The position numbers and the translations under genes were made by a program. Under the pieces are notes generated by a model. That model ran no database searches and had not been told where the DNA came from. It was given only the letters and a program-made list of their open reading frames with translations. Below are positions 34,751-42,847 of a stretch of DNA of 64,000 nt, piece after piece. The stretch's first letter is position 1, and every line of letters starts with the position of its first letter. The stretch spans positions 407,092,001 to 407,156,000 of the forward strand of contig CM097883.1 of the NCBI GenBank assembly GCA_044892505.1. Direction: 5' to 3'. The DNA is from Schmidtea nova (lineage: Eukaryota).

Positions 34751-37700
34751 AGTCTTTAGATTTTATTTTTTGGCTAGGTGTCCCTGCATTACTTTCAATT
34801 ATATCAATACATACAAAACATACGTTCGAGAGGAATTACGTGATACATTTCTCTTTATTTCATTCGAATTACATAAAATTTGAGAATAATTAAGTCAAGC
34901 TTTAGTTTATTTATGAAAAATTTGTCATATTTATGTGAATAATCGAGTGGATACTCATATATCAATTGAGTTAAATAATTTTCAGTGTTAGCTCGTATCT
35001 ACGACTGGCCATCCAGGCAATTCATTGGGTTCAGGTACCACCAATAAAAAGATATTGGTACTCTTTATTCTGGTTCCATCACTATGTATCTAATTTCTCT
35101 TTATTCCTCATTGCTTCCCAATAACTATTTTACATCTGAATTTAATCGCAAACGTTTAATATGAATATTTCATGCCTTTAAAGCTTATCTAAACTCATCA
35201 ACTTAATCATCTCTAGCAACATCAGTTCTCTCATTTCTTATAACTAACGCATCAAAACAAAAAATAAAAATTCATAACAACAAAATTCACAATAAAAGAA
35301 AATTTTATTTCCTAAAAAAATAATTTAATTTCAGTTATACAAAACTAATGTTTCCGGCGATAGGAGCCATCTTTCATAATTGCAGCCTCTTCCTTTCACA
35401 TCTTGCTTAATTTAATCTTTTTCATTGGTTTCCTTGGATGAGCTCTGCGAAGCTAGTTGGCCATTGCTTGAGAATAATTAGCTCTCTCCAAAGGATTTAG
35501 GTTTGATTGCCTTTGTAATAGCTTCGTGTACCAAGCTCTTAATTTTCTGCGACCGCCTTTTAGCGGCTGAATTTCTACCTCCTGCTGCTTAACTTTTAAT
35601 TTCTACTTGTTCCCTAATAGGCTCTGCTCATTTTGTCCTGGCTAAACGATGGTTGTTCCAGCTTCCGGCACCTTTGCAGAATATTGCCTGACATACGCTC
35701 GTTTCTCATCTAGGTTTCTCATCTTCCCTTGTTTCCGTTTCCTTGGTTCTTTGTGTGGCAACGCATCTATAAATATTTAAATAAAGTTTACATCTCTGAG
35801 TCTAGCAAATCTTTTATAATAAAGTTTTCCGTCAAACAAAACTGCCATTTACTTTCTTTATTAGAATAAAAGTGAAATAAAAAGGAACTAAAGACAAAAA
35901 CATGTAAAATCTATTTCATCACACGACTCTACTTCCTCAATGATTATACACTTTCTGTCACTACTTCTCCATCTTTCAGCTTCATTCTCAAATTCCTTCG
36001 ATGACTCTTTTTAGGACCAGTGGTGTCGTCTGTTCTTACTCAATTTCTTCCTTCAGGTTCTGATAGGTCCTGTGGTCATAATTTAATTTTTGAGGACAGT
36101 CCCACTACTTCTTTGCTATTGTTGCTTCACCGTTCGATCCTTGTTTTGCCCTGATTATTCGACTATAGACGTTTGTGTTTCTTCGTCCATGAGTTCTCTA
36201 TTTAGAATACCCAATTTTGGAAATTGGCTAGGTTGATAGCTTTCTATTGATATAGGGTATCCGGTTTCGCCTTCCAGAATAACTACGAAACCAAACTCTC
36301 GGAAAATGTTCTGTACGATGGGTGTTTGAATGACCGTATTTATTATTTGCATCAGAGCATCTCCTAATAATTTATATGATATATGACTGCAAACATGATT
36401 TCAGTGATTCTAAGAACTGGCAAAAATTATTCGGCCTTGTAACTTTTATACCTATTGTCTTATTTTAGTAGAAGTCGGTGTGTGCTCCCTTACTGAGTGA
36501 TATCTCACGTAATTATCTTTCTATTATTGAGCTCATCAAATATAGGTTAAGACCCCAGGAAAATCTTTTTATGTAGGTCAATGTAAGAACGCTTTAAGGT
36601 AAAAAAGTTTGCGACAAAAATATAGATTACAAGCCACTTTACAGGAATCGTGCAAATATGTATTAATGAAACAGGAAATTAGCTCAAATGGGCATGACCA
36701 TATGGAGTGTATGCTCATTTTAAATAATTCTTCTACATACTGGGCGGTTCGGAAAAAATTTGAATTCAATTTCGTACTCGGATTCGAATAAAAGAATGTT
36801 ATGTTGTGTCAATAGGAAATTAGGTATCGTAACGAAACAATTGTTTTATGCGAATCGATAAAAATATTCATACCTTCTACGATTCAATCCGAGCCTTCGA
36901 GACCTTGGATGATCTATGAAGAAACATTAGTGTAGTAAGACATGATTAATTTGCATGCAATTTTGATAACGTAGTAGTATTATTTTTTACATTTATTCAT
37001 TGTTATCAGTCATAGTATCATCAATGTTCATGAAACTGCTTTCACGATGAAAGAAAGGAAGAATCAATTTGATTGGCTAACACTAAAAGACAAGGGGTGT
37101 AGGAAATAGGATATAGAAAATTTGAAAAAGGAAGCGCTAATCCGTTAAACTTAAAACTTTTTTTAAAAAAAATAAATCCTATTTCAAAATTGNNNNNNNN
37201 NNNNNNNNNNNNNNNNNNNNNNNNNNNNNNNNNNNNNNNNNNNNNNNNNNNNNNNNNNNNNNNNNNNNNNNNNNNNNNNNNNNNNNNNNNNNNNNNNNNN
37301 NNNNNNNNNNNNNNNNNNNNNNNNNNNNNNNNNNNNNNNNNNNNNNNNNNNNNNNNNNNNCTTTAGGCACTCCATCTTAACCCTAGCTTCAAAATTTAAT
37401 TGATAAAACTTTAATTATAAATATTTTATAAGAATGGAGCAAATTCAATGGGCAAGAATCACATTAGACAGCTACGCAAAGCTGCAAAAACGTCATGCAG
37501 GGCAAAAACTCCAAATCACCGACAACTTGGAAATTCCAAATTATTTCTGAATAGACGATAGAAAAATCAAAATACTTCGAATACACCGAAATATGGGAAT
37601 GAAGTTAACGGACGAAGTTCAAATATCCAACAAAGAACAATACTACCTGCATATTATCAAAGGAGCAGTGAAAATAATGGACGGCAATCAACCGTGGTTA

Positions 37701-38043
37701 GAAATAAAGAAATTGTTGTCCTGGAAAATCCAAAAGGAAATCATGGCAAAACTTATACGTGCAGCGAACGAGGAAACGATTATTGTTTTAGAAACAAGAA
37801 TAGAGAACGAGCCAAATTAAAGACCAAGCACACAACCATCAGAGGTATAGGATTCAACGTTGATGAAAATAACAGCAGAAATGTTGCGAGGATAAATTAC
37901 TATGGTAAAATAGTTAAAGACGTATGTTTGACCTCAAGAGGAAAAATTGGCTTTTTCAATTCCAAGATTCATGGGATTACGGAAGTGGCCAGCAGAAATC
38001 AAAATGATCAATATCCTGAAATGAAATATATTCAGAGGCTAAC

Positions 38044-41000
38044 GTGGGGGAAATATTAATAGGCCACGATAGATCAACTGTATGGGACACGGGATCTCGC
38101 AGCCGCTCAAATACTGCAAAGAATGAACATAGCCCGATAATGAAGAGTCCGAAAAAAATTTTTGATGATACACCCGCCGTTAACCAGTGCTTAGTTGAAT
38201 GTCTTCACATAGACATTCCTAGCACTGGTCAGAAAGAAGATCCTGATCAAGCTATTATTTTATATAAAAACAATAACTTAATTTTTCCTTCTAGAACATC
38301 ATCCTTACAACCTCTCGAAACTATGAAGAAATACAACAAAACCCAGAATTTTTCCATCAACATTAAACTATCCTTATCAAACCCTAATCCCAATTCTACT
38401 TTTGTAAATACCACCGATGGAACTCTCAACCCAAATGATCATAAAATAATATCCCAAAAATCAGAGAATTTGAAATCCAAAAAAATTACAGAATCTATAA
38501 CTAAGTCTGAAGAATTCAATTCTAATTTAGAAATTTTTACTAATAAAAATTTCAAAAATGAAAATAGTGGAAGTCATCACTACTTTAATAATAAAAATTA
38601 CCATTCAAATCAAGAAACTTCTAATAAATCCTATAGCAAAGAATATCATAATAAAAATTTAAAAAATAAAAATTTCAATTTCGAAAACTATGAAAAATAT
38701 GATAATAACACCAATTATTATAAAAATACTGAAGAACCTTATAAAAAATATCAACTTAAAAACTATGAAAATAATAAAAATAAAATACCAAAATTTGAAA
38801 ATAAAGAAGAATATTATAACACCAATGTAATGAATACAGAAGATTATATAAAAATTAAAAAATTTAACTTTTTAAATGATTATTATCAAAAAAATCGAAA
38901 ATATTTTAAAAGACTCGAAAAAATTCCTATAAATAGAATTATTTTCGAAATTTTAAAATCAAAAGCATTTTTTGAAAATAGGGAAAATTTGTTTAAATTA
39001 AAAGCAAATTTCAGAGTTCCCGATAATGAAGAGTCCGAAAAAAATTTTTTGCCCCCCTGCGGGGGGCAAAAAACTCGTCCGCCTTCGGCGGACAAACAGA
39101 ATGTAAATATCCCAGCAACTGAAAAGAAAGAACTATTCGGTTTTGAGAAAGAACCAAGATATCGTAACATCAGAAAAATTAAAACTAATCAATCTATTAC
39201 TCCTACAAAATCAACAACAACATCAATCATCCCATCTACTTCAATGGTCCCACCAACATCAAGTGTCCCACCAAACTCAATTGTCCCAGCAATATCACTC
39301 GTCCCTTCAACATCAAAAGATCCTTCAACATCTAATGCTTCTCCTACATCTAATGCTTCTTCAACATCAAAAACTCCTTCAACATCAAATAACCCATCAA
39401 AACCAACAGATCTTCGATCTTCAACTGCCCCTACAACATCAACTAATCCTTCAACATCTACTAAGCCTTCAACATCAACTGCTCCCTCAACATCAACTGC
39501 TCCGTCAACATCAACTGCTCCGACAACTGCTCCGTCAACATCAACTAATCCTTCAACATCAACTGCTCCCTCAACATCAACTGCTCCTTCAACATCAACT
39601 GCTCCCTCAACATCAACTGAACCTTCAACCCCAACTGCTCCTCTTAAATCCCTCCCAAACATAAATACCACACAAATTACTACCCCCACTGTCCCGAATG
39701 ATATTGCCAAAGCAAATCTGTATTACTCATTTTATAAACCCTCTATACAGATCAAAGGAAAACCTGATGAAATATTCCAAATCATTGAAAAAACTCCAGT
39801 TAACTGGGATATCTTTAATCAGGAAAGGCTTATAAAAACTGAAGAAATCAAAAATTTTAACAATTCACAAATTAGAGTATTAGTGAAAGAATATGCCTCG
39901 CTCCTCTTCTCACTGAACAACATTAAACAAGAAAATTTGAAACTACTTCAAGCTGCAAATGAAAACTTTATTGTCTGGAAACCAATACTCGAAAAAATAG
40001 GTGGAATCAGAGATTTCATTAAAATTAAGAACTTACAGAAAGAAGTCATTGAAGATTTATTTAAAAAATATCACAATTTTTACACCACTCCATCAACTAC
40101 TCCATCAACATCTACTATTCCCCTAACGTCAACCACTAACTCAAAATGTACGGGTCCTTCAACATCTACTGACCTTTCAACATCTACTACTCTTTCAACA
40201 TCTACTACTCTTTCAACATCTACTACTCTTTCAACATCTACTACTCTTTCAACATCTACTACTCTTTCAACATCTACTACTCTTTCAACTTATTCTACTC
40301 CTTCAACATCTACTGGTCTCTTGACCTGTACTGCTCCTTCAACAACGACTAACCCTTCAACATCTAATGATCCCTCAACCTCTACTGCTACTCCAACAAC
40401 CACTGATCTTTCAACATCTACTAATCCCTCAACTTATAAACAATCAAACAATATCTTCATCTTCGGTTCTACACCCTCAAATCCTACAAATCTTTCATGT
40501 AACACTAATATCCACAAATACAATACCAGATTGAATACTAAAATTATCTCTCTCCCAGATAAAGAACAGACTGCTTCCTATTACAGAACTTATAATCCAA
40601 TACCCTCCGAAAAAAGAAAACCACTTGAAATATTTAATATCATCCATAAAACTCCAATTTTCTGGGATATATTTAACAAAAATAAGAAACTCACCACTAA
40701 GGATATTTGCTCGATGAATGAAAAAACAATTGAAGACCTGATAAATCACTATATCGTTTTCTTCTCCTCCCCTCCACTTCATCTGGATAAATCAAAAACT
40801 TTCCAAGTAATTCATAACGATATATACAACTGGCTCCCTGCCTTGGAACTATGTGGAATCACAGACTACCTTACCCTATGCAACTTATCAGCAAACGACA
40901 TGAATAAACTTAACTTTGAATACAACAATGAAAGTACTCAATCACAAAAAGACCTCATTGAATTTGCAGGAGAATCCATGTTCAATACTACCCAAAGACC

Positions 41001-41304
41001 TATTGAGAAAATTTATGCATCAGTTAGCATTATCGACCTGATGTATGACATCTCCAAATTAAAAAATAAAATGATTAATAATGAAGAAAAGAGAATTTCA
41101 ATATCACACTGCAAACCCCCAACTTGGTTCCCTCTCTTATGCATCCTAGGTGAGGACGCCATCGATTATCTAGAAATATCAAAATCTGAATTCATTAAAA
41201 TGTTGATTAAAGCCCAAACATTTCATAAAGAAAGTCACTTTGTATCAATTGACCCTCCTGAAGATGACCTGGATAAAATGATGTGTGAATATTTACACAT
41301 ATAA
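38044..41304 (+). CDS. Uncharacterised 1086-aa protein with N/K/Y-rich and PST-rich segments and a duplicated ~120-aa domain
   Basis: An uninterrupted 3.26-kb frame in very AT-rich DNA, with internal repeats at ~39712-40080 and ~40570-40923. Confidence 0.6.
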   Translation: MGEILIGHDRSTVWDTGSRSRSNTAKNEHSPIMKSPKKIFDDTPAVNQCLVECLHIDIPSTGQKEDPDQAIILYKNNNLIFPSRTSSLQPLETMKKYNKTQNFSINIKLSLSNPNPNSTFVNTTDGTLNPNDHKIISQKSENLKSKKITESITKSEEFNSNLEIFTNKNFKNENSGSHHYFNNKNYHSNQETSNKSYSKEYHNKNLKNKNFNFENYEKYDNNTNYYKNTEEPYKKYQLKNYENNKNKIPKFENKEEYYNTNVMNTEDYIKIKKFNFLNDYYQKNRKYFKRLEKIPINRIIFEILKSKAFFENRENLFKLKANFRVPDNEESEKNFLPPCGGQKTRPPSADKQNVNIPATEKKELFGFEKEPRYRNIRKIKTNQSITPTKSTTTSIIPSTSMVPPTSSVPPNSIVPAISLVPSTSKDPSTSNASPTSNASSTSKTPSTSNNPSKPTDLRSSTAPTTSTNPSTSTKPSTSTAPSTSTAPSTSTAPTTAPSTSTNPSTSTAPSTSTAPSTSTAPSTSTEPSTPTAPLKSLPNINTTQITTPTVPNDIAKANLYYSFYKPSIQIKGKPDEIFQIIEKTPVNWDIFNQERLIKTEEIKNFNNSQIRVLVKEYASLLFSLNNIKQENLKLLQAANENFIVWKPILEKIGGIRDFIKIKNLQKEVIEDLFKKYHNFYTTPSTTPSTSTIPLTSTTNSKCTGPSTSTDLSTSTTLSTSTTLSTSTTLSTSTTLSTSTTLSTSTTLSTYSTPSTSTGLLTCTAPSTTTNPSTSNDPSTSTATPTTTDLSTSTNPSTYKQSNNIFIFGSTPSNPTNLSCNTNIHKYNTRLNTKIISLPDKEQTASYYRTYNPIPSEKRKPLEIFNIIHKTPIFWDIFNKNKKLTTKDICSMNEKTIEDLINHYIVFFSSPPLHLDKSKTFQVIHNDIYNWLPALELCGITDYLTLCNLSANDMNKLNFEYNNESTQSQKDLIEFAGESMFNTTQRPIEKIYASVSIIDLMYDISKLKNKMINNEEKRISISHCKPPTWFPLLCILGEDAIDYLEISKSEFIKMLIKAQTFHKESHFVSIDPPEDDLDKMMCEYLHI

Positions 41305-41339
41305 AAAATCTCTATCTCCCAATCAATCCTATCTTCCTG

Positions 41340-41830
41340 AATCCAATCTCCTGCTCTTAGATTCACACCTGCTCAACATTTTCAATCTCCCAATCAATTG
41401 TTGATCCTACTCACACAATTCCACAACATGTTCACCGAAACAAACTACTACCTCCTGCTCTAAGATTCGCACCTGCTCAATATTCTCAATCTCTCAATCA
41501 ATATTCACACCGATCCTCAATATTCACACCTGCTCAACATTTTCAATCTCCCAATCAATTGTTGATCCTACTCACACAATTCCACAACATGTTCACCGAA
41601 ACAAACTACTACCTCCTGCTCTAAGATTCGCACCTGCTCAATATTCTCAATCTCAATCAATATTCACACCGATCCTCAATATTCACACCTGCTCAATATT
41701 CTCAATTTCCCAATCAATAGTCAATCCTACCCACACCATTCAACAACATGTTCTCCGAAAAATACTAATACCTCCTGCTCTTAGATTCACACCTGCTCAA
41801 TATTCTCAATCTCTCAATCAATACTCTCCT
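41340..41830 (+). repeat. Tandem ~180-bp repeats in the 3' region of the poly(A)-tailed element
   Basis: Repeated cacctgctcaacattttcaatctcccaatcaattgttgatcctactcacacaattccacaacatgttcaccgaaac… units. Confidence 0.85.
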
Positions 41831-42008
41831 CCTGATCCAACAATCCAGTGTCCCTAAACCAGACATTGGCTAGAAGTTTATGAAAATGCTAAAATAAGCT
41901 GGAACTAATGTCTCTGCCCTCAGGGGTGGGACTCGTTAGCCTGTCTCCTCGGAGCAGAAGTTTTTTTTTAAATAAAATTTGTAGGCCCACTTATCAGGGT
42001 GGGTCGCC

Positions 42009-42052
<44 letters not shown>

Positions 42053-42099
42053 GTCGCGAGAATGGTTTAAACTACAGACTGTAGCATGGTGAATATGCG

Positions 42100-42847
42100 G
42101 AGTTTGGGATGCACACTGCGCTGGAGAATGTCATAACGATAAGGAAAATATACAAACGGATGGAAAACCATTAGATTTACGACAGTGATTCCCAGAAAAC
42201 AACCGTCAAAAAAGTATTATCTAAAGTTTAGATATTCTTGAAATGATGAAACAGCATGTATTCGTTCTTAGCAAAGAAATGTCTCACTATTTTCCTGATC
42301 TGCGAGAATTAGAAAAACACCATCGTTTTATCACTAACCCATGTGAAGTATCCATTAGTGACCTGCCTTCGGACGACAATTTAGTTCAGGAACAATTTAT
42401 TGATTTAATAAACGATGAGGGTGCAAAACATGTTTTCCGTGGAACTTGCTGTAGTAACTTTTGGATTGAAATGGCACTGTCCTATCCTGATGTTGCAAAG
42501 ATGGCTCTAAGAGTCCTCATTCCATTTGCAACCACCTATGAGTGTGAGTCGGCTTTTTCTACACTACTTACAATTAAAACAAAAGCAAGAAATAGATTAT
42601 GCGCGACAAATGATATGCGAGTTGCACTGGCCAAGACAAAGCCAAACCTAGAAGCTCTAGTTCTGGAAAAACGCCTGCATTCGTCGCATTAAAATTGTTA
42701 TTTAACTTTTACGATGTAATATTTTCTCAATATATATGTTTTATTTGCTATACCTTTTTTATTTTTTATTATTAGGGGTCCGCAAGCTATCTAACAACTT
42801 TTAAAGCGACCGCCTCGCAGAAAATTTCAAAGAATTTGAGAACCGCT
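42100..42847 (+). mobile_element. 3' end of a hAT (Buster/Charlie-type) transposon
   Basis: ORF 42243-42692 encodes the hAT dimerisation domain (FW…YP…A.RVLIPFATTYECESAFS). The right TIR TTTGAGAACCGCTG ends at 42847. Confidence 0.85.

What the first reader, a model, noticed from the sequence alone, without database searches (positions are those of the whole stretch)
39712..41232. Unrecognised ~120-aa domain duplicated inside the 1086-aa ORF
Seen: copy 1 is ANLYYSFYKPSIQIKGKPDEIFQIIEKTPVNWDIFNQERLIKTEEIKNFN…WKPILEKIGGIRDFIKIKNL and copy 2 is TASYYRTYNPIPSEKRKPLEIFNIIHKTPIFWDIFNKNKKLTTKDICSMN…WLPALELCGITDYLTLCNL. They align nearly gap-free, conserving YY..Y.P, KP.EIF.II.KTP..WDIFN and W.P.LE..G.I.D. 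A third partial copy (WFPLLCILGEDAIDYLEI) follows. The copies are separated by long STAPST/STTLST linkers, a beads-on-a-string layout. Motif conservation despite broad divergence suggests past protein-level selection. I cannot assign the domain to a known family.
Basis: seen in the sequence. Interest (0 to 1): 0.75.

Follow-up and report, generated by a model that had tools for sequence, protein, structure and literature searches.

The report
Orphan domain pair in planarian retroposon gene
The two look-alike 120-residue segments are real and have been kept by selection, but they belong to the only gene of a roughly 3.9-kb mobile element with a poly(A) tail and no reverse transcriptase, present in over 100 copies in the flatworm Schmidtea nova; the protein resembles nothing known.

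Summary
D1 (39694-40080) and D2 (40540-40935) are 35% identical over 119 residues (E 4e-20). They are separated by 18-bp Ser/Thr/Pro repeat arrays. The third partial copy is not significant.

The ORF is not a single-copy host gene. It is the only gene of a ~3.9-kb element (38130-42051).
- The CDS probably starts at the ATG at 38140 (1054 aa).
- The 3' UTR is repetitive. A structured ~190-nt 3' tail and a poly(A) run follow.
- The genome, identified as Schmidtea nova schNov1, holds at least 135-143 domain matches, 14 of them 92-100% identical.
- 5' ends vary. I found no reverse transcriptase or endonuclease and no target-site duplications.

Selection acts on the two domains: shared substitutions are 16 nonsynonymous to 17 synonymous against a neutral 4.1:1. 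The N- and C-terminal parts look neutral among these young copies. An older single-domain lineage shows that the conserved module is about 245 aa, the domain plus the C-terminal extension. The window's two-domain ORF joins two ancient types.

Pfam, PDB sequences, a profile search of 1.84 billion proteins, AlphaFold and fold searches gave no relative.

Best reading: a new Gag/ORF1-like protein of a non-autonomous retroposon. The function is inferred, and no RNA data were available.

The scan had already noted this same stretch (s1-429399).

The parts
38130..42051 (+). One copy of a ~3.9-kb poly(A)-tailed retroposon that lacks a reverse transcriptase
   Evidence: blastn against 14 other genomic copies: the shared sequence starts at 38109-38660 (mostly 38133) and ends at 42051. 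5' ends compared. No target-site duplication of 6 bases or more.
38140..41304 (+). Probable coding sequence, 1054 aa plus stop, the only long ORF of the element
   Evidence: First ATG of the open frame. Three copies share the same 11 bases just upstream of GATAATG and then diverge. Pfam finds nothing in the whole protein.
38140..39192 (+). N-terminal Asn/Lys-rich region (351 aa, pI 9.4)
   Evidence: Composition. Near-neutral pN/pS of 0.7-0.97. Found at 88% identity in a copy whose domain is only 48% identical, so the family is modular.
39193..39693 (+). Ser/Thr/Pro linker 1, including an 18-bp tandem array at 39304-39642
   Evidence: Tandem Repeats Finder: period 18, 19.2 copies. 71% S+T+P. 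Length differs between copies.
39694..40080 (+). Domain copy D1
   Evidence: 35% identical to D2, E 4e-20. pN/pS 0.34-0.59 for the copies with 10 or more differences. dN/dS 0.21-0.58 between subfamilies.
40081..40539 (+). Ser/Thr/Pro linker 2, including an 18-bp tandem array at 40091-40433
   Evidence: Tandem Repeats Finder: period 18, 19.1 copies.
40540..40935 (+). Domain copy D2
   Evidence: BLASTP. pN/pS 0.18-0.44. The D2 type is the commoner type in the genome.
40936..41301 (+).
   Evidence: D2 plus this extension aligns end to end with the D1-type domain plus extension of an older single-domain copy (L017): 34% over 245 aa, E 9e-38. 115 genomic matches. Not significantly similar to the domain itself.
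41361..41823 (+). 3' UTR tandem repeats, 159 bp x 2.9
   Evidence: Tandem Repeats Finder, 93% matches.
41830..42016 (+). Conserved 3' tail: two stem-loops (41910-41932, 41940-41960), a T run, AATAAA (41971-41976) and a terminal hairpin (41984-42005)
   Evidence: 89-95% nucleotide identity even in copies whose domain is only 48-55% identical in protein. The tail core is found 72 times in the genome against 0 for the reversed control. Compensatory base-pair changes in the terminal hairpin in L020 and L017.
42013..42051 (+). Poly(A) tail, 39 A
   Evidence: All 12 copies with a 3' end carry an A run at the same point, 16-48 A in the six copies measured.

Best explanation
The ORF is the single gene of a non-autonomous, poly(A)-tailed non-LTR retroposon family of Schmidtea nova.

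Shown:
- The unit is about 3.9 kb. It has a 5' leader of only 5-16 bases, one 1054-aa ORF, a repetitive 3' UTR, a structured and conserved ~190-nt tail, and poly(A).
- It is dispersed on all three chromosomes in over 100 copies, from near-identical to badly decayed. 5' ends vary, and it encodes no reverse transcriptase or endonuclease.
- The two ~120-aa domains are under purifying selection, while the rest of the protein drifts among young copies.
- The family's conserved protein module is the domain plus a ~120-aa C-terminal extension. It exists in two ancient types that are 34% identical. The window's subfamily carries one domain of each type.

Inferred: the protein acts like a Gag/ORF1 protein. 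It binds the element's own RNA in cis and forms a particle. That particle borrows the reverse transcriptase of an autonomous LINE, which recognises the structured tail and/or the poly(A). The Ser/Thr/Pro arrays would be disordered spacers.

The confidence of 0.6 is for the whole statement: about 0.85 for the retroposon reading and about 0.4 for the Gag/ORF1-like function.
For: - Copy number and decay series.
- Shared boundaries, poly(A) and 5' truncation.
- One copy (L016) is polyadenylated about 8 bases after AATAAA. This shows the A tails come from mRNA 3' processing.
- No RT or EN: Pfam finds nothing in the ORF. In the diverged copies the spacing from D2 to the tail stays about 0.9-1 kb, which leaves no room for a second ORF.
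- The tail is far more conserved than the protein (against 15 and 50), with hairpin covariation.
- Mosaic copies exist: one has the N-terminal part at 88%, the domain at 48%, the C-terminal part at 56% and the tail at 93%.
- Selection: dN/dS 0.21-0.58 between subfamilies. Shared substitutions in D1+D2 are N16:S17, p 4e-5. The N- and C-terminal parts give N35:S9, p 0.70. Fisher test between the two, p 0.007.
- Genome identity: 283 contigs, 1,251,382,582 bp and N50 455,729,997 match schNov1 in Table 1 of PMC11410931.
Against:
- No autonomous partner was found. The top 150 of 27,911 RT candidates are not next to tails.
- No target-site duplications in six complete copies, unlike L1-type insertion.
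- None of the hallmarks of known ORF1/Gag proteins (RRM, CCHC knuckles, coiled coil) was detected.
- The fold is unknown: pLDDT 54.7 and 42.9.
- D2 and the C-terminal part are acidic to neutral (pI 6.5 and 5.2), which is not typical of RNA binders.
- Only 4 of the 14 closest copies keep an open frame of 1055 aa or more.
Confidence: 0.6

Rival explanations
1. The copies are processed retrocopies of one highly expressed host gene (or a small host gene family) that encodes a planarian-specific protein. On this view they are dead on arrival and selection acted only on the parent gene.
For: - The 5' leader is very short, so no obvious internal promoter is carried along.
- Poly(A) tails and no introns.
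- dN/dS below 1 between copies born at different times is also expected under this model.
- Most copies are broken.
Against: - The ~190-nt tail stays 89-95% identical, with compensatory changes, across lineages whose proteins are only 34-55% identical.
- Several old lineages each have many copies.
- Modules are recombined between lineages.
- All 12 held copies with a 3' end have poly(A).
Confidence: 0.12
2. The ORF is a decaying repeat with no protein function. On this view the similarity between D1 and D2 and between copies only reflects recent copying.
For: - No homologues outside this genome.
- No expression data.
- Low-confidence structure models.
Against: - Purifying selection is specific to D1 and D2.
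- Open frames of 945-1130 aa are kept in several diverged lineages.
- 34% identity is kept collinearly over 245 aa up to the stop codon between ancient lineages.
Confidence: 0.05
3. The protein is a secreted or surface mucin-like host protein in which the domains are binding beads between O-glycosylated linkers.
For: Two Ser/Thr/Pro hexapeptide arrays that are 66-71% S+T+P. The same genome holds many giant mucins (earlier notes listed).
Against: - The N-terminus has no hydrophobic signal-like stretch (sequence).
- The gene sits in a poly(A) retroposon present in over 100 copies.
- The linker arrays vary freely in length between copies.
Confidence: 0.03

Closest known systems
HeT-A of Drosophila (telomeric non-LTR retrotransposon that encodes only a Gag-like protein); recalled from my own knowledge, not tested with sequence here
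   Same: Poly(A)-tailed non-LTR element with a single Gag-type ORF, a long 3' UTR and no reverse transcriptase of its own, so it depends on an RT supplied in trans.
   Different: No sequence or domain similarity: there are no CCHC knuckles. The planarian element is dispersed rather than telomeric. It has a very short 5' leader and its protein carries an orphan helical module.
HAL1 (half-L1) elements of mammals, ORF1-only derivatives of L1; recalled from my own knowledge
   Same: A non-autonomous LINE-type element that keeps only the first ORF under selection and is mobilised by a partner's ORF2 protein.
   Different: HAL1 ORF1 is plainly L1 ORF1 (Transposase_22). Here no Pfam family matches, no partner is known and there are no target-site duplications.
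SINE/LINE pairs that share a 3' tail, and internally deleted derivatives of R2-type LINEs. LINE/R2 is reported as a prominent LINE class in Schmidtea (PMC11410931).
   Same: The structured 3' tail is more conserved than the rest of the element, with compensatory changes. Target-site duplications are absent.
   Different: This element is 3.9 kb long and encodes a selected 1054-aa protein. Sharing of the tail with any RT-encoding element was not shown.

Membership tests
Non-autonomous ORF1-only non-LTR retroposon (HeT-A / HAL1 kind) | 3' poly(A) at a fixed end, with variable 5' truncation, in dispersed copies | tested here: met
   All 12 copies with a 3' end finish at the same point in an A run. 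5' ends lie at 38109-38660. Copies are found on C1, C2, C3 and C55.
Non-autonomous ORF1-only non-LTR retroposon (HeT-A / HAL1 kind) | No reverse transcriptase or endonuclease inside the unit | tested here: met
   Pfam finds nothing in the 1086-aa frame or its parts. Only about 0.75 kb of repetitive UTR lies between the stop codon and the poly(A).
Non-autonomous ORF1-only non-LTR retroposon (HeT-A / HAL1 kind) | An autonomous partner that shares the ORF1 type or the 3' tail | tested here: inconclusive
   About 22 of the 72 tail-core matches are not next to any listed family ORF, but their sequence could not be fetched. The top 150 RT hits are not adjacent to tails.
Non-autonomous ORF1-only non-LTR retroposon (HeT-A / HAL1 kind) | Target-site duplications flanking complete copies (L1-type insertion) | tested here: not met
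   In six copies with both ends, no shared word of 6 bases or more that could be a duplication, apart from a satellite match and one chance 6-mer.
Known LINE ORF1 / Gag protein families (L1 Transposase_22; CCHC-knuckle Gag-like; RRM types) | A match to the family's domain models | tested here: not met
   No Pfam family at E 1 or below for the whole protein. Only scattered chance hits at E 10 or below across 12 domain variants.
PD-(D/E)XK / Cas4 nucleases (lead from the ESM Atlas feature search) | Alpha/beta core with a conserved D...(D/E)xK motif | tested here: not met
   Atlas scores are 0.91-0.93 with only 118-144 shared features. The models are all-helical. The invariant columns contain no D...(D/E)xK pattern. 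Pfam gives no match.
Secreted mucins | Signal peptide plus Pro/Thr/Ser arrays | tested here: not met
   The arrays are present, but the N-terminus is hydrophilic with no signal-like stretch (sequence; by inspection, no predictor was run).
Processed retrocopies of a host gene | One parent locus with introns or a promoter and without poly(A) | not testable with these tools
All held copies carry poly(A).

The most novel reading that the evidence does not exclude
The ~245-aa module (domain plus C-terminal extension) would be a new, planarian-restricted class of retroelement particle protein with a new helical fold, built from a ~50-residue 'P-x-x-W ... I-x-x-L' sub-repeat. It would let a whole radiation of elements without reverse transcriptase parasitise a LINE through a shared structured 3' tail. 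That would make it a fifth or sixth kind of ORF1, unrelated to the RRM, CCHC and esterase types.
Probability: 0.35. Interest if true: 0.6.

Novelty: new variant of a known kind. Interest (0 to 1): 0.5.

Why it matters
Planarian genomes are about two-thirds repeats, and the paper that published this assembly leaves the expanded element families of S. nova for future work (PMC11410931).

- This family shows that a protein-coding element without a reverse transcriptase can persist and diversify for a long time. Selection is focused on one orphan domain and on a structured RNA tail.
- That gives a defined protein-RNA pair for studying how non-autonomous elements capture a LINE's machinery.
- It is also a warning for annotation. 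The 1054-aa open frames could be called as mucin-like orphan genes.
- The domain itself adds a candidate new fold family, but it cannot be assigned until a deeper alignment or a structure exists.

Tried and rejected
- Pfam on the whole ORF, its parts and 12 domain variants: nothing consistent.
- PDB sequence profiles for the domain and for the domain plus extension: best E 0.21-0.22.
- Exhaustive profile search of 1.84 billion representatives: three hits, all low-complexity repeat proteins.
- Word search with the domain-plus-extension profile: none.
- AlphaFold on D1 and on D2 plus the extension: pLDDT 54.7 and 42.9, all-helical.
- Fold searches: Foldseek against PDB gave no match. VIA-align wide gave best Z 4.2, generic helices. 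Atlas shape search gave TM 0.35 or less.
- Atlas feature search pointed to Cas4/PD-(D/E)XK. I rejected it because there is no motif and the predicted secondary structure does not fit.
- Rfam on 37000-42400: one sub-threshold snoRNA hit outside the element.
I did not try to read them by other means.
- Partner search through RVT_1 was uninformative.
- Target-site duplications: none.
- A spliced-leader or upstream-exon origin of the 5' end: I considered it and dropped it, because the bases upstream of the shared 11 differ in every copy.
- A weak N-terminal 'zeroth' copy of the domain motif near residues 290-330 scored only E about 100.
- Internal half-domain duplication: suggestive only, hhalign P 0.007.
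- Paper searches found no description of this element.
- The N run at 37193-37360 was left untouched.
Full report
**1. The observation**

The window holds an open frame at 38044-41304 on the + strand. Copy 1 begins at residue 557 (base 39712) and copy 2 at residue 843 (base 40570). BLASTP of the two segments gives 42 identities in 119 aligned residues, two gaps, E 4e-20. The duplication is therefore real and well beyond chance.

The linkers are genuine tandem arrays of an 18-bp (six-residue) unit, about 19 units each, at 39304-39642 and 40091-40433.

The proposed third partial copy near 41125 does not reach significance. BLASTP gives E 0.59, and a profile-profile comparison of the C-terminal part with the domain gives P 0.07.

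**2. The genome**

The tool reports 1,251,382,582 bases in 283 contigs, with contig C2 of 455,729,997 bases. These three numbers equal the total length, contig count and N50 of assembly schNov1 of Schmidtea nova in Table 1 of PMC11410931.

**3. The ORF belongs to a dispersed repeat**

- Searching the genome with D1 gives at least 143 matches and with D2 at least 135. They range from 100% down to about 25% identity, and many carry stop codons.
- I fetched 14 copies with flanks. They share the sequence from about 38109-38133 to 42051 and nothing outside it. Some start later (38169, 38301, 38660).
- Every copy with a 3' end stops at the same base and continues into an A run. The run is 16-48 bases long in the six complete copies measured.
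- Three copies share the same 11 bases immediately upstream of GATAATG and differ completely before that. The window copy keeps only the last three of them.
- The unit therefore starts 5-16 bases before the ATG at 38140, and the coding sequence is 1054 aa.
- The 32 codons that the mechanical ORF adds upstream belong to a different repeat. It spans 37361-38106 and has at least 40 copies at about 87% identity.
- Downstream, 42052-42229 is unique. From 42230 a hAT-type element begins.
- No target-site duplication of six or more bases flanks any of six complete copies.
- The unit has no other ORF, and Pfam finds no reverse transcriptase, endonuclease or any other family.

**4. The 3' tail**

The last ~190 bases before the poly(A) have at least 40 scored matches out of 235 candidates.

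The tail stays 93-95% identical in copies whose domain is only 48-55% identical in protein. Examples are C1:339775532, C1:209963760, C2:365951234, C1:265162186 and C2:16481955.

A strict pattern for the tail core occurs 72 times, against none for the reversed control. It is also found behind the oldest lineages, whose C-terminal parts are 33-41% identical.

An alignment of 13 tails predicts two internal stem-loops and a terminal 9-bp hairpin.
- In the hairpin, L020 changes C-G to U-A and L017 changes C-G to A-U.
- L034, L019 and L028 show one-sided changes that keep pairing.
- No true homologue breaks it.
- The apparent exceptions come from L016. That copy was polyadenylated about eight bases after the AATAAA signal and so lacks the hairpin. 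This shows that the A tails derive from mRNA 3' processing.

I could not tell whether it is the same one.

**5. Selection**

Between subfamilies, D1 has dN/dS of 0.21-0.58. Against the window copy, pN/pS is about 0.2-0.6 for D1 and D2 wherever there are enough differences to measure. It is 0.7-0.97 for the N-terminal region and about 0.7-0.9 for the C-terminal part.

I split substitutions among the 12-14 young copies into shared ones, which arose in active lineages, and private ones, which arose after insertion.

| Region | Class | Nonsynonymous : synonymous | Test against neutral |
|---|---|---|---|
| D1+D2 | shared | 16 : 17 (neutral 4.1 : 1) | binomial p 4e-5 |
| N- and C-terminal parts | shared | 35 : 9 | p 0.70 |
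| D1+D2 | private | 20 : 10 | p 0.07 |

The Fisher test between the two shared classes gives p 0.007. The domains are therefore what selection preserves among the young copies.

**6. The real module and the origin of the pair**

Older D1-type copies at 57-68% identity are followed directly by a piece that is 33-35% identical to the window's C-terminal part.

In L017 the D1-type domain plus its own extension runs to a stop codon. It aligns end to end with the window's D2 plus extension: 34% identity over 245 residues, E 9e-38. The family's conserved module is thus about 245 aa, in two ancient types.

The window's subfamily has a D1-type domain without its extension, placed upstream of a complete D2-type module and joined by the repeat arrays.

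Copies are also mosaics. C1:3397... has the N-terminal region at 88%, the domain at 48%, the extension at 56% and the tail at 93%. L031 and L029 have a C-terminal part almost identical to the window's, although their domains differ by 2-4% (pN). This fits template switching between co-expressed lineages. I infer the mechanism; it was not observed.

Within a domain, the two halves align weakly to each other, W to W and KEY to KKY (hhalign P 0.007). This hints at a ~50-residue ancestral unit and no more.

**7. What the protein is**

No search found a relative:
- Pfam.
- PDB sequence profiles.
- The exhaustive profile search of 1.84 billion representatives, which returned three spurious repeat proteins.
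- The word search.
- Foldseek, VIA-align and Atlas shape searches on the models.

The models are all-helical but of low confidence (pLDDT 54.7 and 42.9), because only shallow alignments could be built. A Cas4/PD-(D/E)XK lead from the Atlas feature search fails on motif and secondary structure. These libraries did not return the window's own protein, so they say nothing about other planarians.

**8. Mechanism**

Shown: a single-ORF, poly(A)-tailed unit without a reverse transcriptase, with a structured and strongly conserved tail, many lineages, recombination between them, and selection on the domain.

Inferred: the protein works as a Gag/ORF1-type partner of its own RNA, and a LINE's reverse transcriptase copies that RNA. 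LINE/R2 elements are prominent in Schmidtea (PMC11410931), and R2-type enzymes are known to recognise 3' RNA structure (from my own knowledge). This is a candidate only. No partner was identified, and the L016 copy shows that the hairpin is not indispensable.

The Ser/Thr/Pro arrays vary in length between copies and most likely act as disordered spacers.

**9. Rivals**

- Host gene with retrocopies. This is hard to reconcile with a tail that is far more conserved than the protein across lineages, and with the modular recombinants.
- Dead repeat. The selection tests contradict it.
- Secreted mucin. There is no signal-like N-terminus, and the gene sits in a retroposon.

**10. Limits**

- No RNA data could be obtained.
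Diverged copies and tail-only loci could therefore not be read, and I did not try to get them another way.
- The N run at 37193-37360 was not touched.

**11. Verdict**

The domain is a true orphan under selection. Its setting is a known kind of genetic element (a non-autonomous coding retroposon) with a new protein and a new variant of architecture. Interest is moderate.

Noticed in passing
window 37361-38106: A different high-copy repeat (at least 40 copies at about 87% identity) abuts the element's 5' end. It holds the 121-aa frame 37694-38059 and supplies the first 32 codons of the mechanical 1086-aa ORF.
   Followed up: partly
window 42230-42700: A young hAT-type element: at least 35 copies at 96-98% identity, and the ORF 42243-42692 matches the hAT dimerisation domain at E 1.2e-9.
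   Followed up: partly
G000:C1:442368971-442380011: One family copy carries about 12 tandem repeats of a 750-bp piece of the N-terminal coding region. Open frames run up to about 1,780 aa and are followed by D2, the extension and the tail.
   Followed up: no
L034:2753-4165 (+), inside an old family copy on the opposite strand: A 471-aa frame with FLYWCH zinc finger and MULE transposase domains is inserted between D1 and the tail of this copy.
   Followed up: partly
G000, e.g. C1:156977899, C1:293145095, C1:439962296, C2:261252140, C3:144835846: About 22 exact matches to the tail core, several with identical spacer variants, lie at places where none of the four protein searches listed a family ORF. 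They could be truncated copies, another cargo, or the autonomous partner.
   Followed up: no
L023 both flanks and L033 3' flank; window 42052-42058 and L021:7359-7365: Two copies are flanked by the same satellite-like repeat. Two other copies both continue with CGTCGCG right after the poly(A). This may be a target preference or coincidence.
   Followed up: no
window 37193-37360: A run of 168 N lies just upstream of the neighbouring repeat.
   Followed up: no
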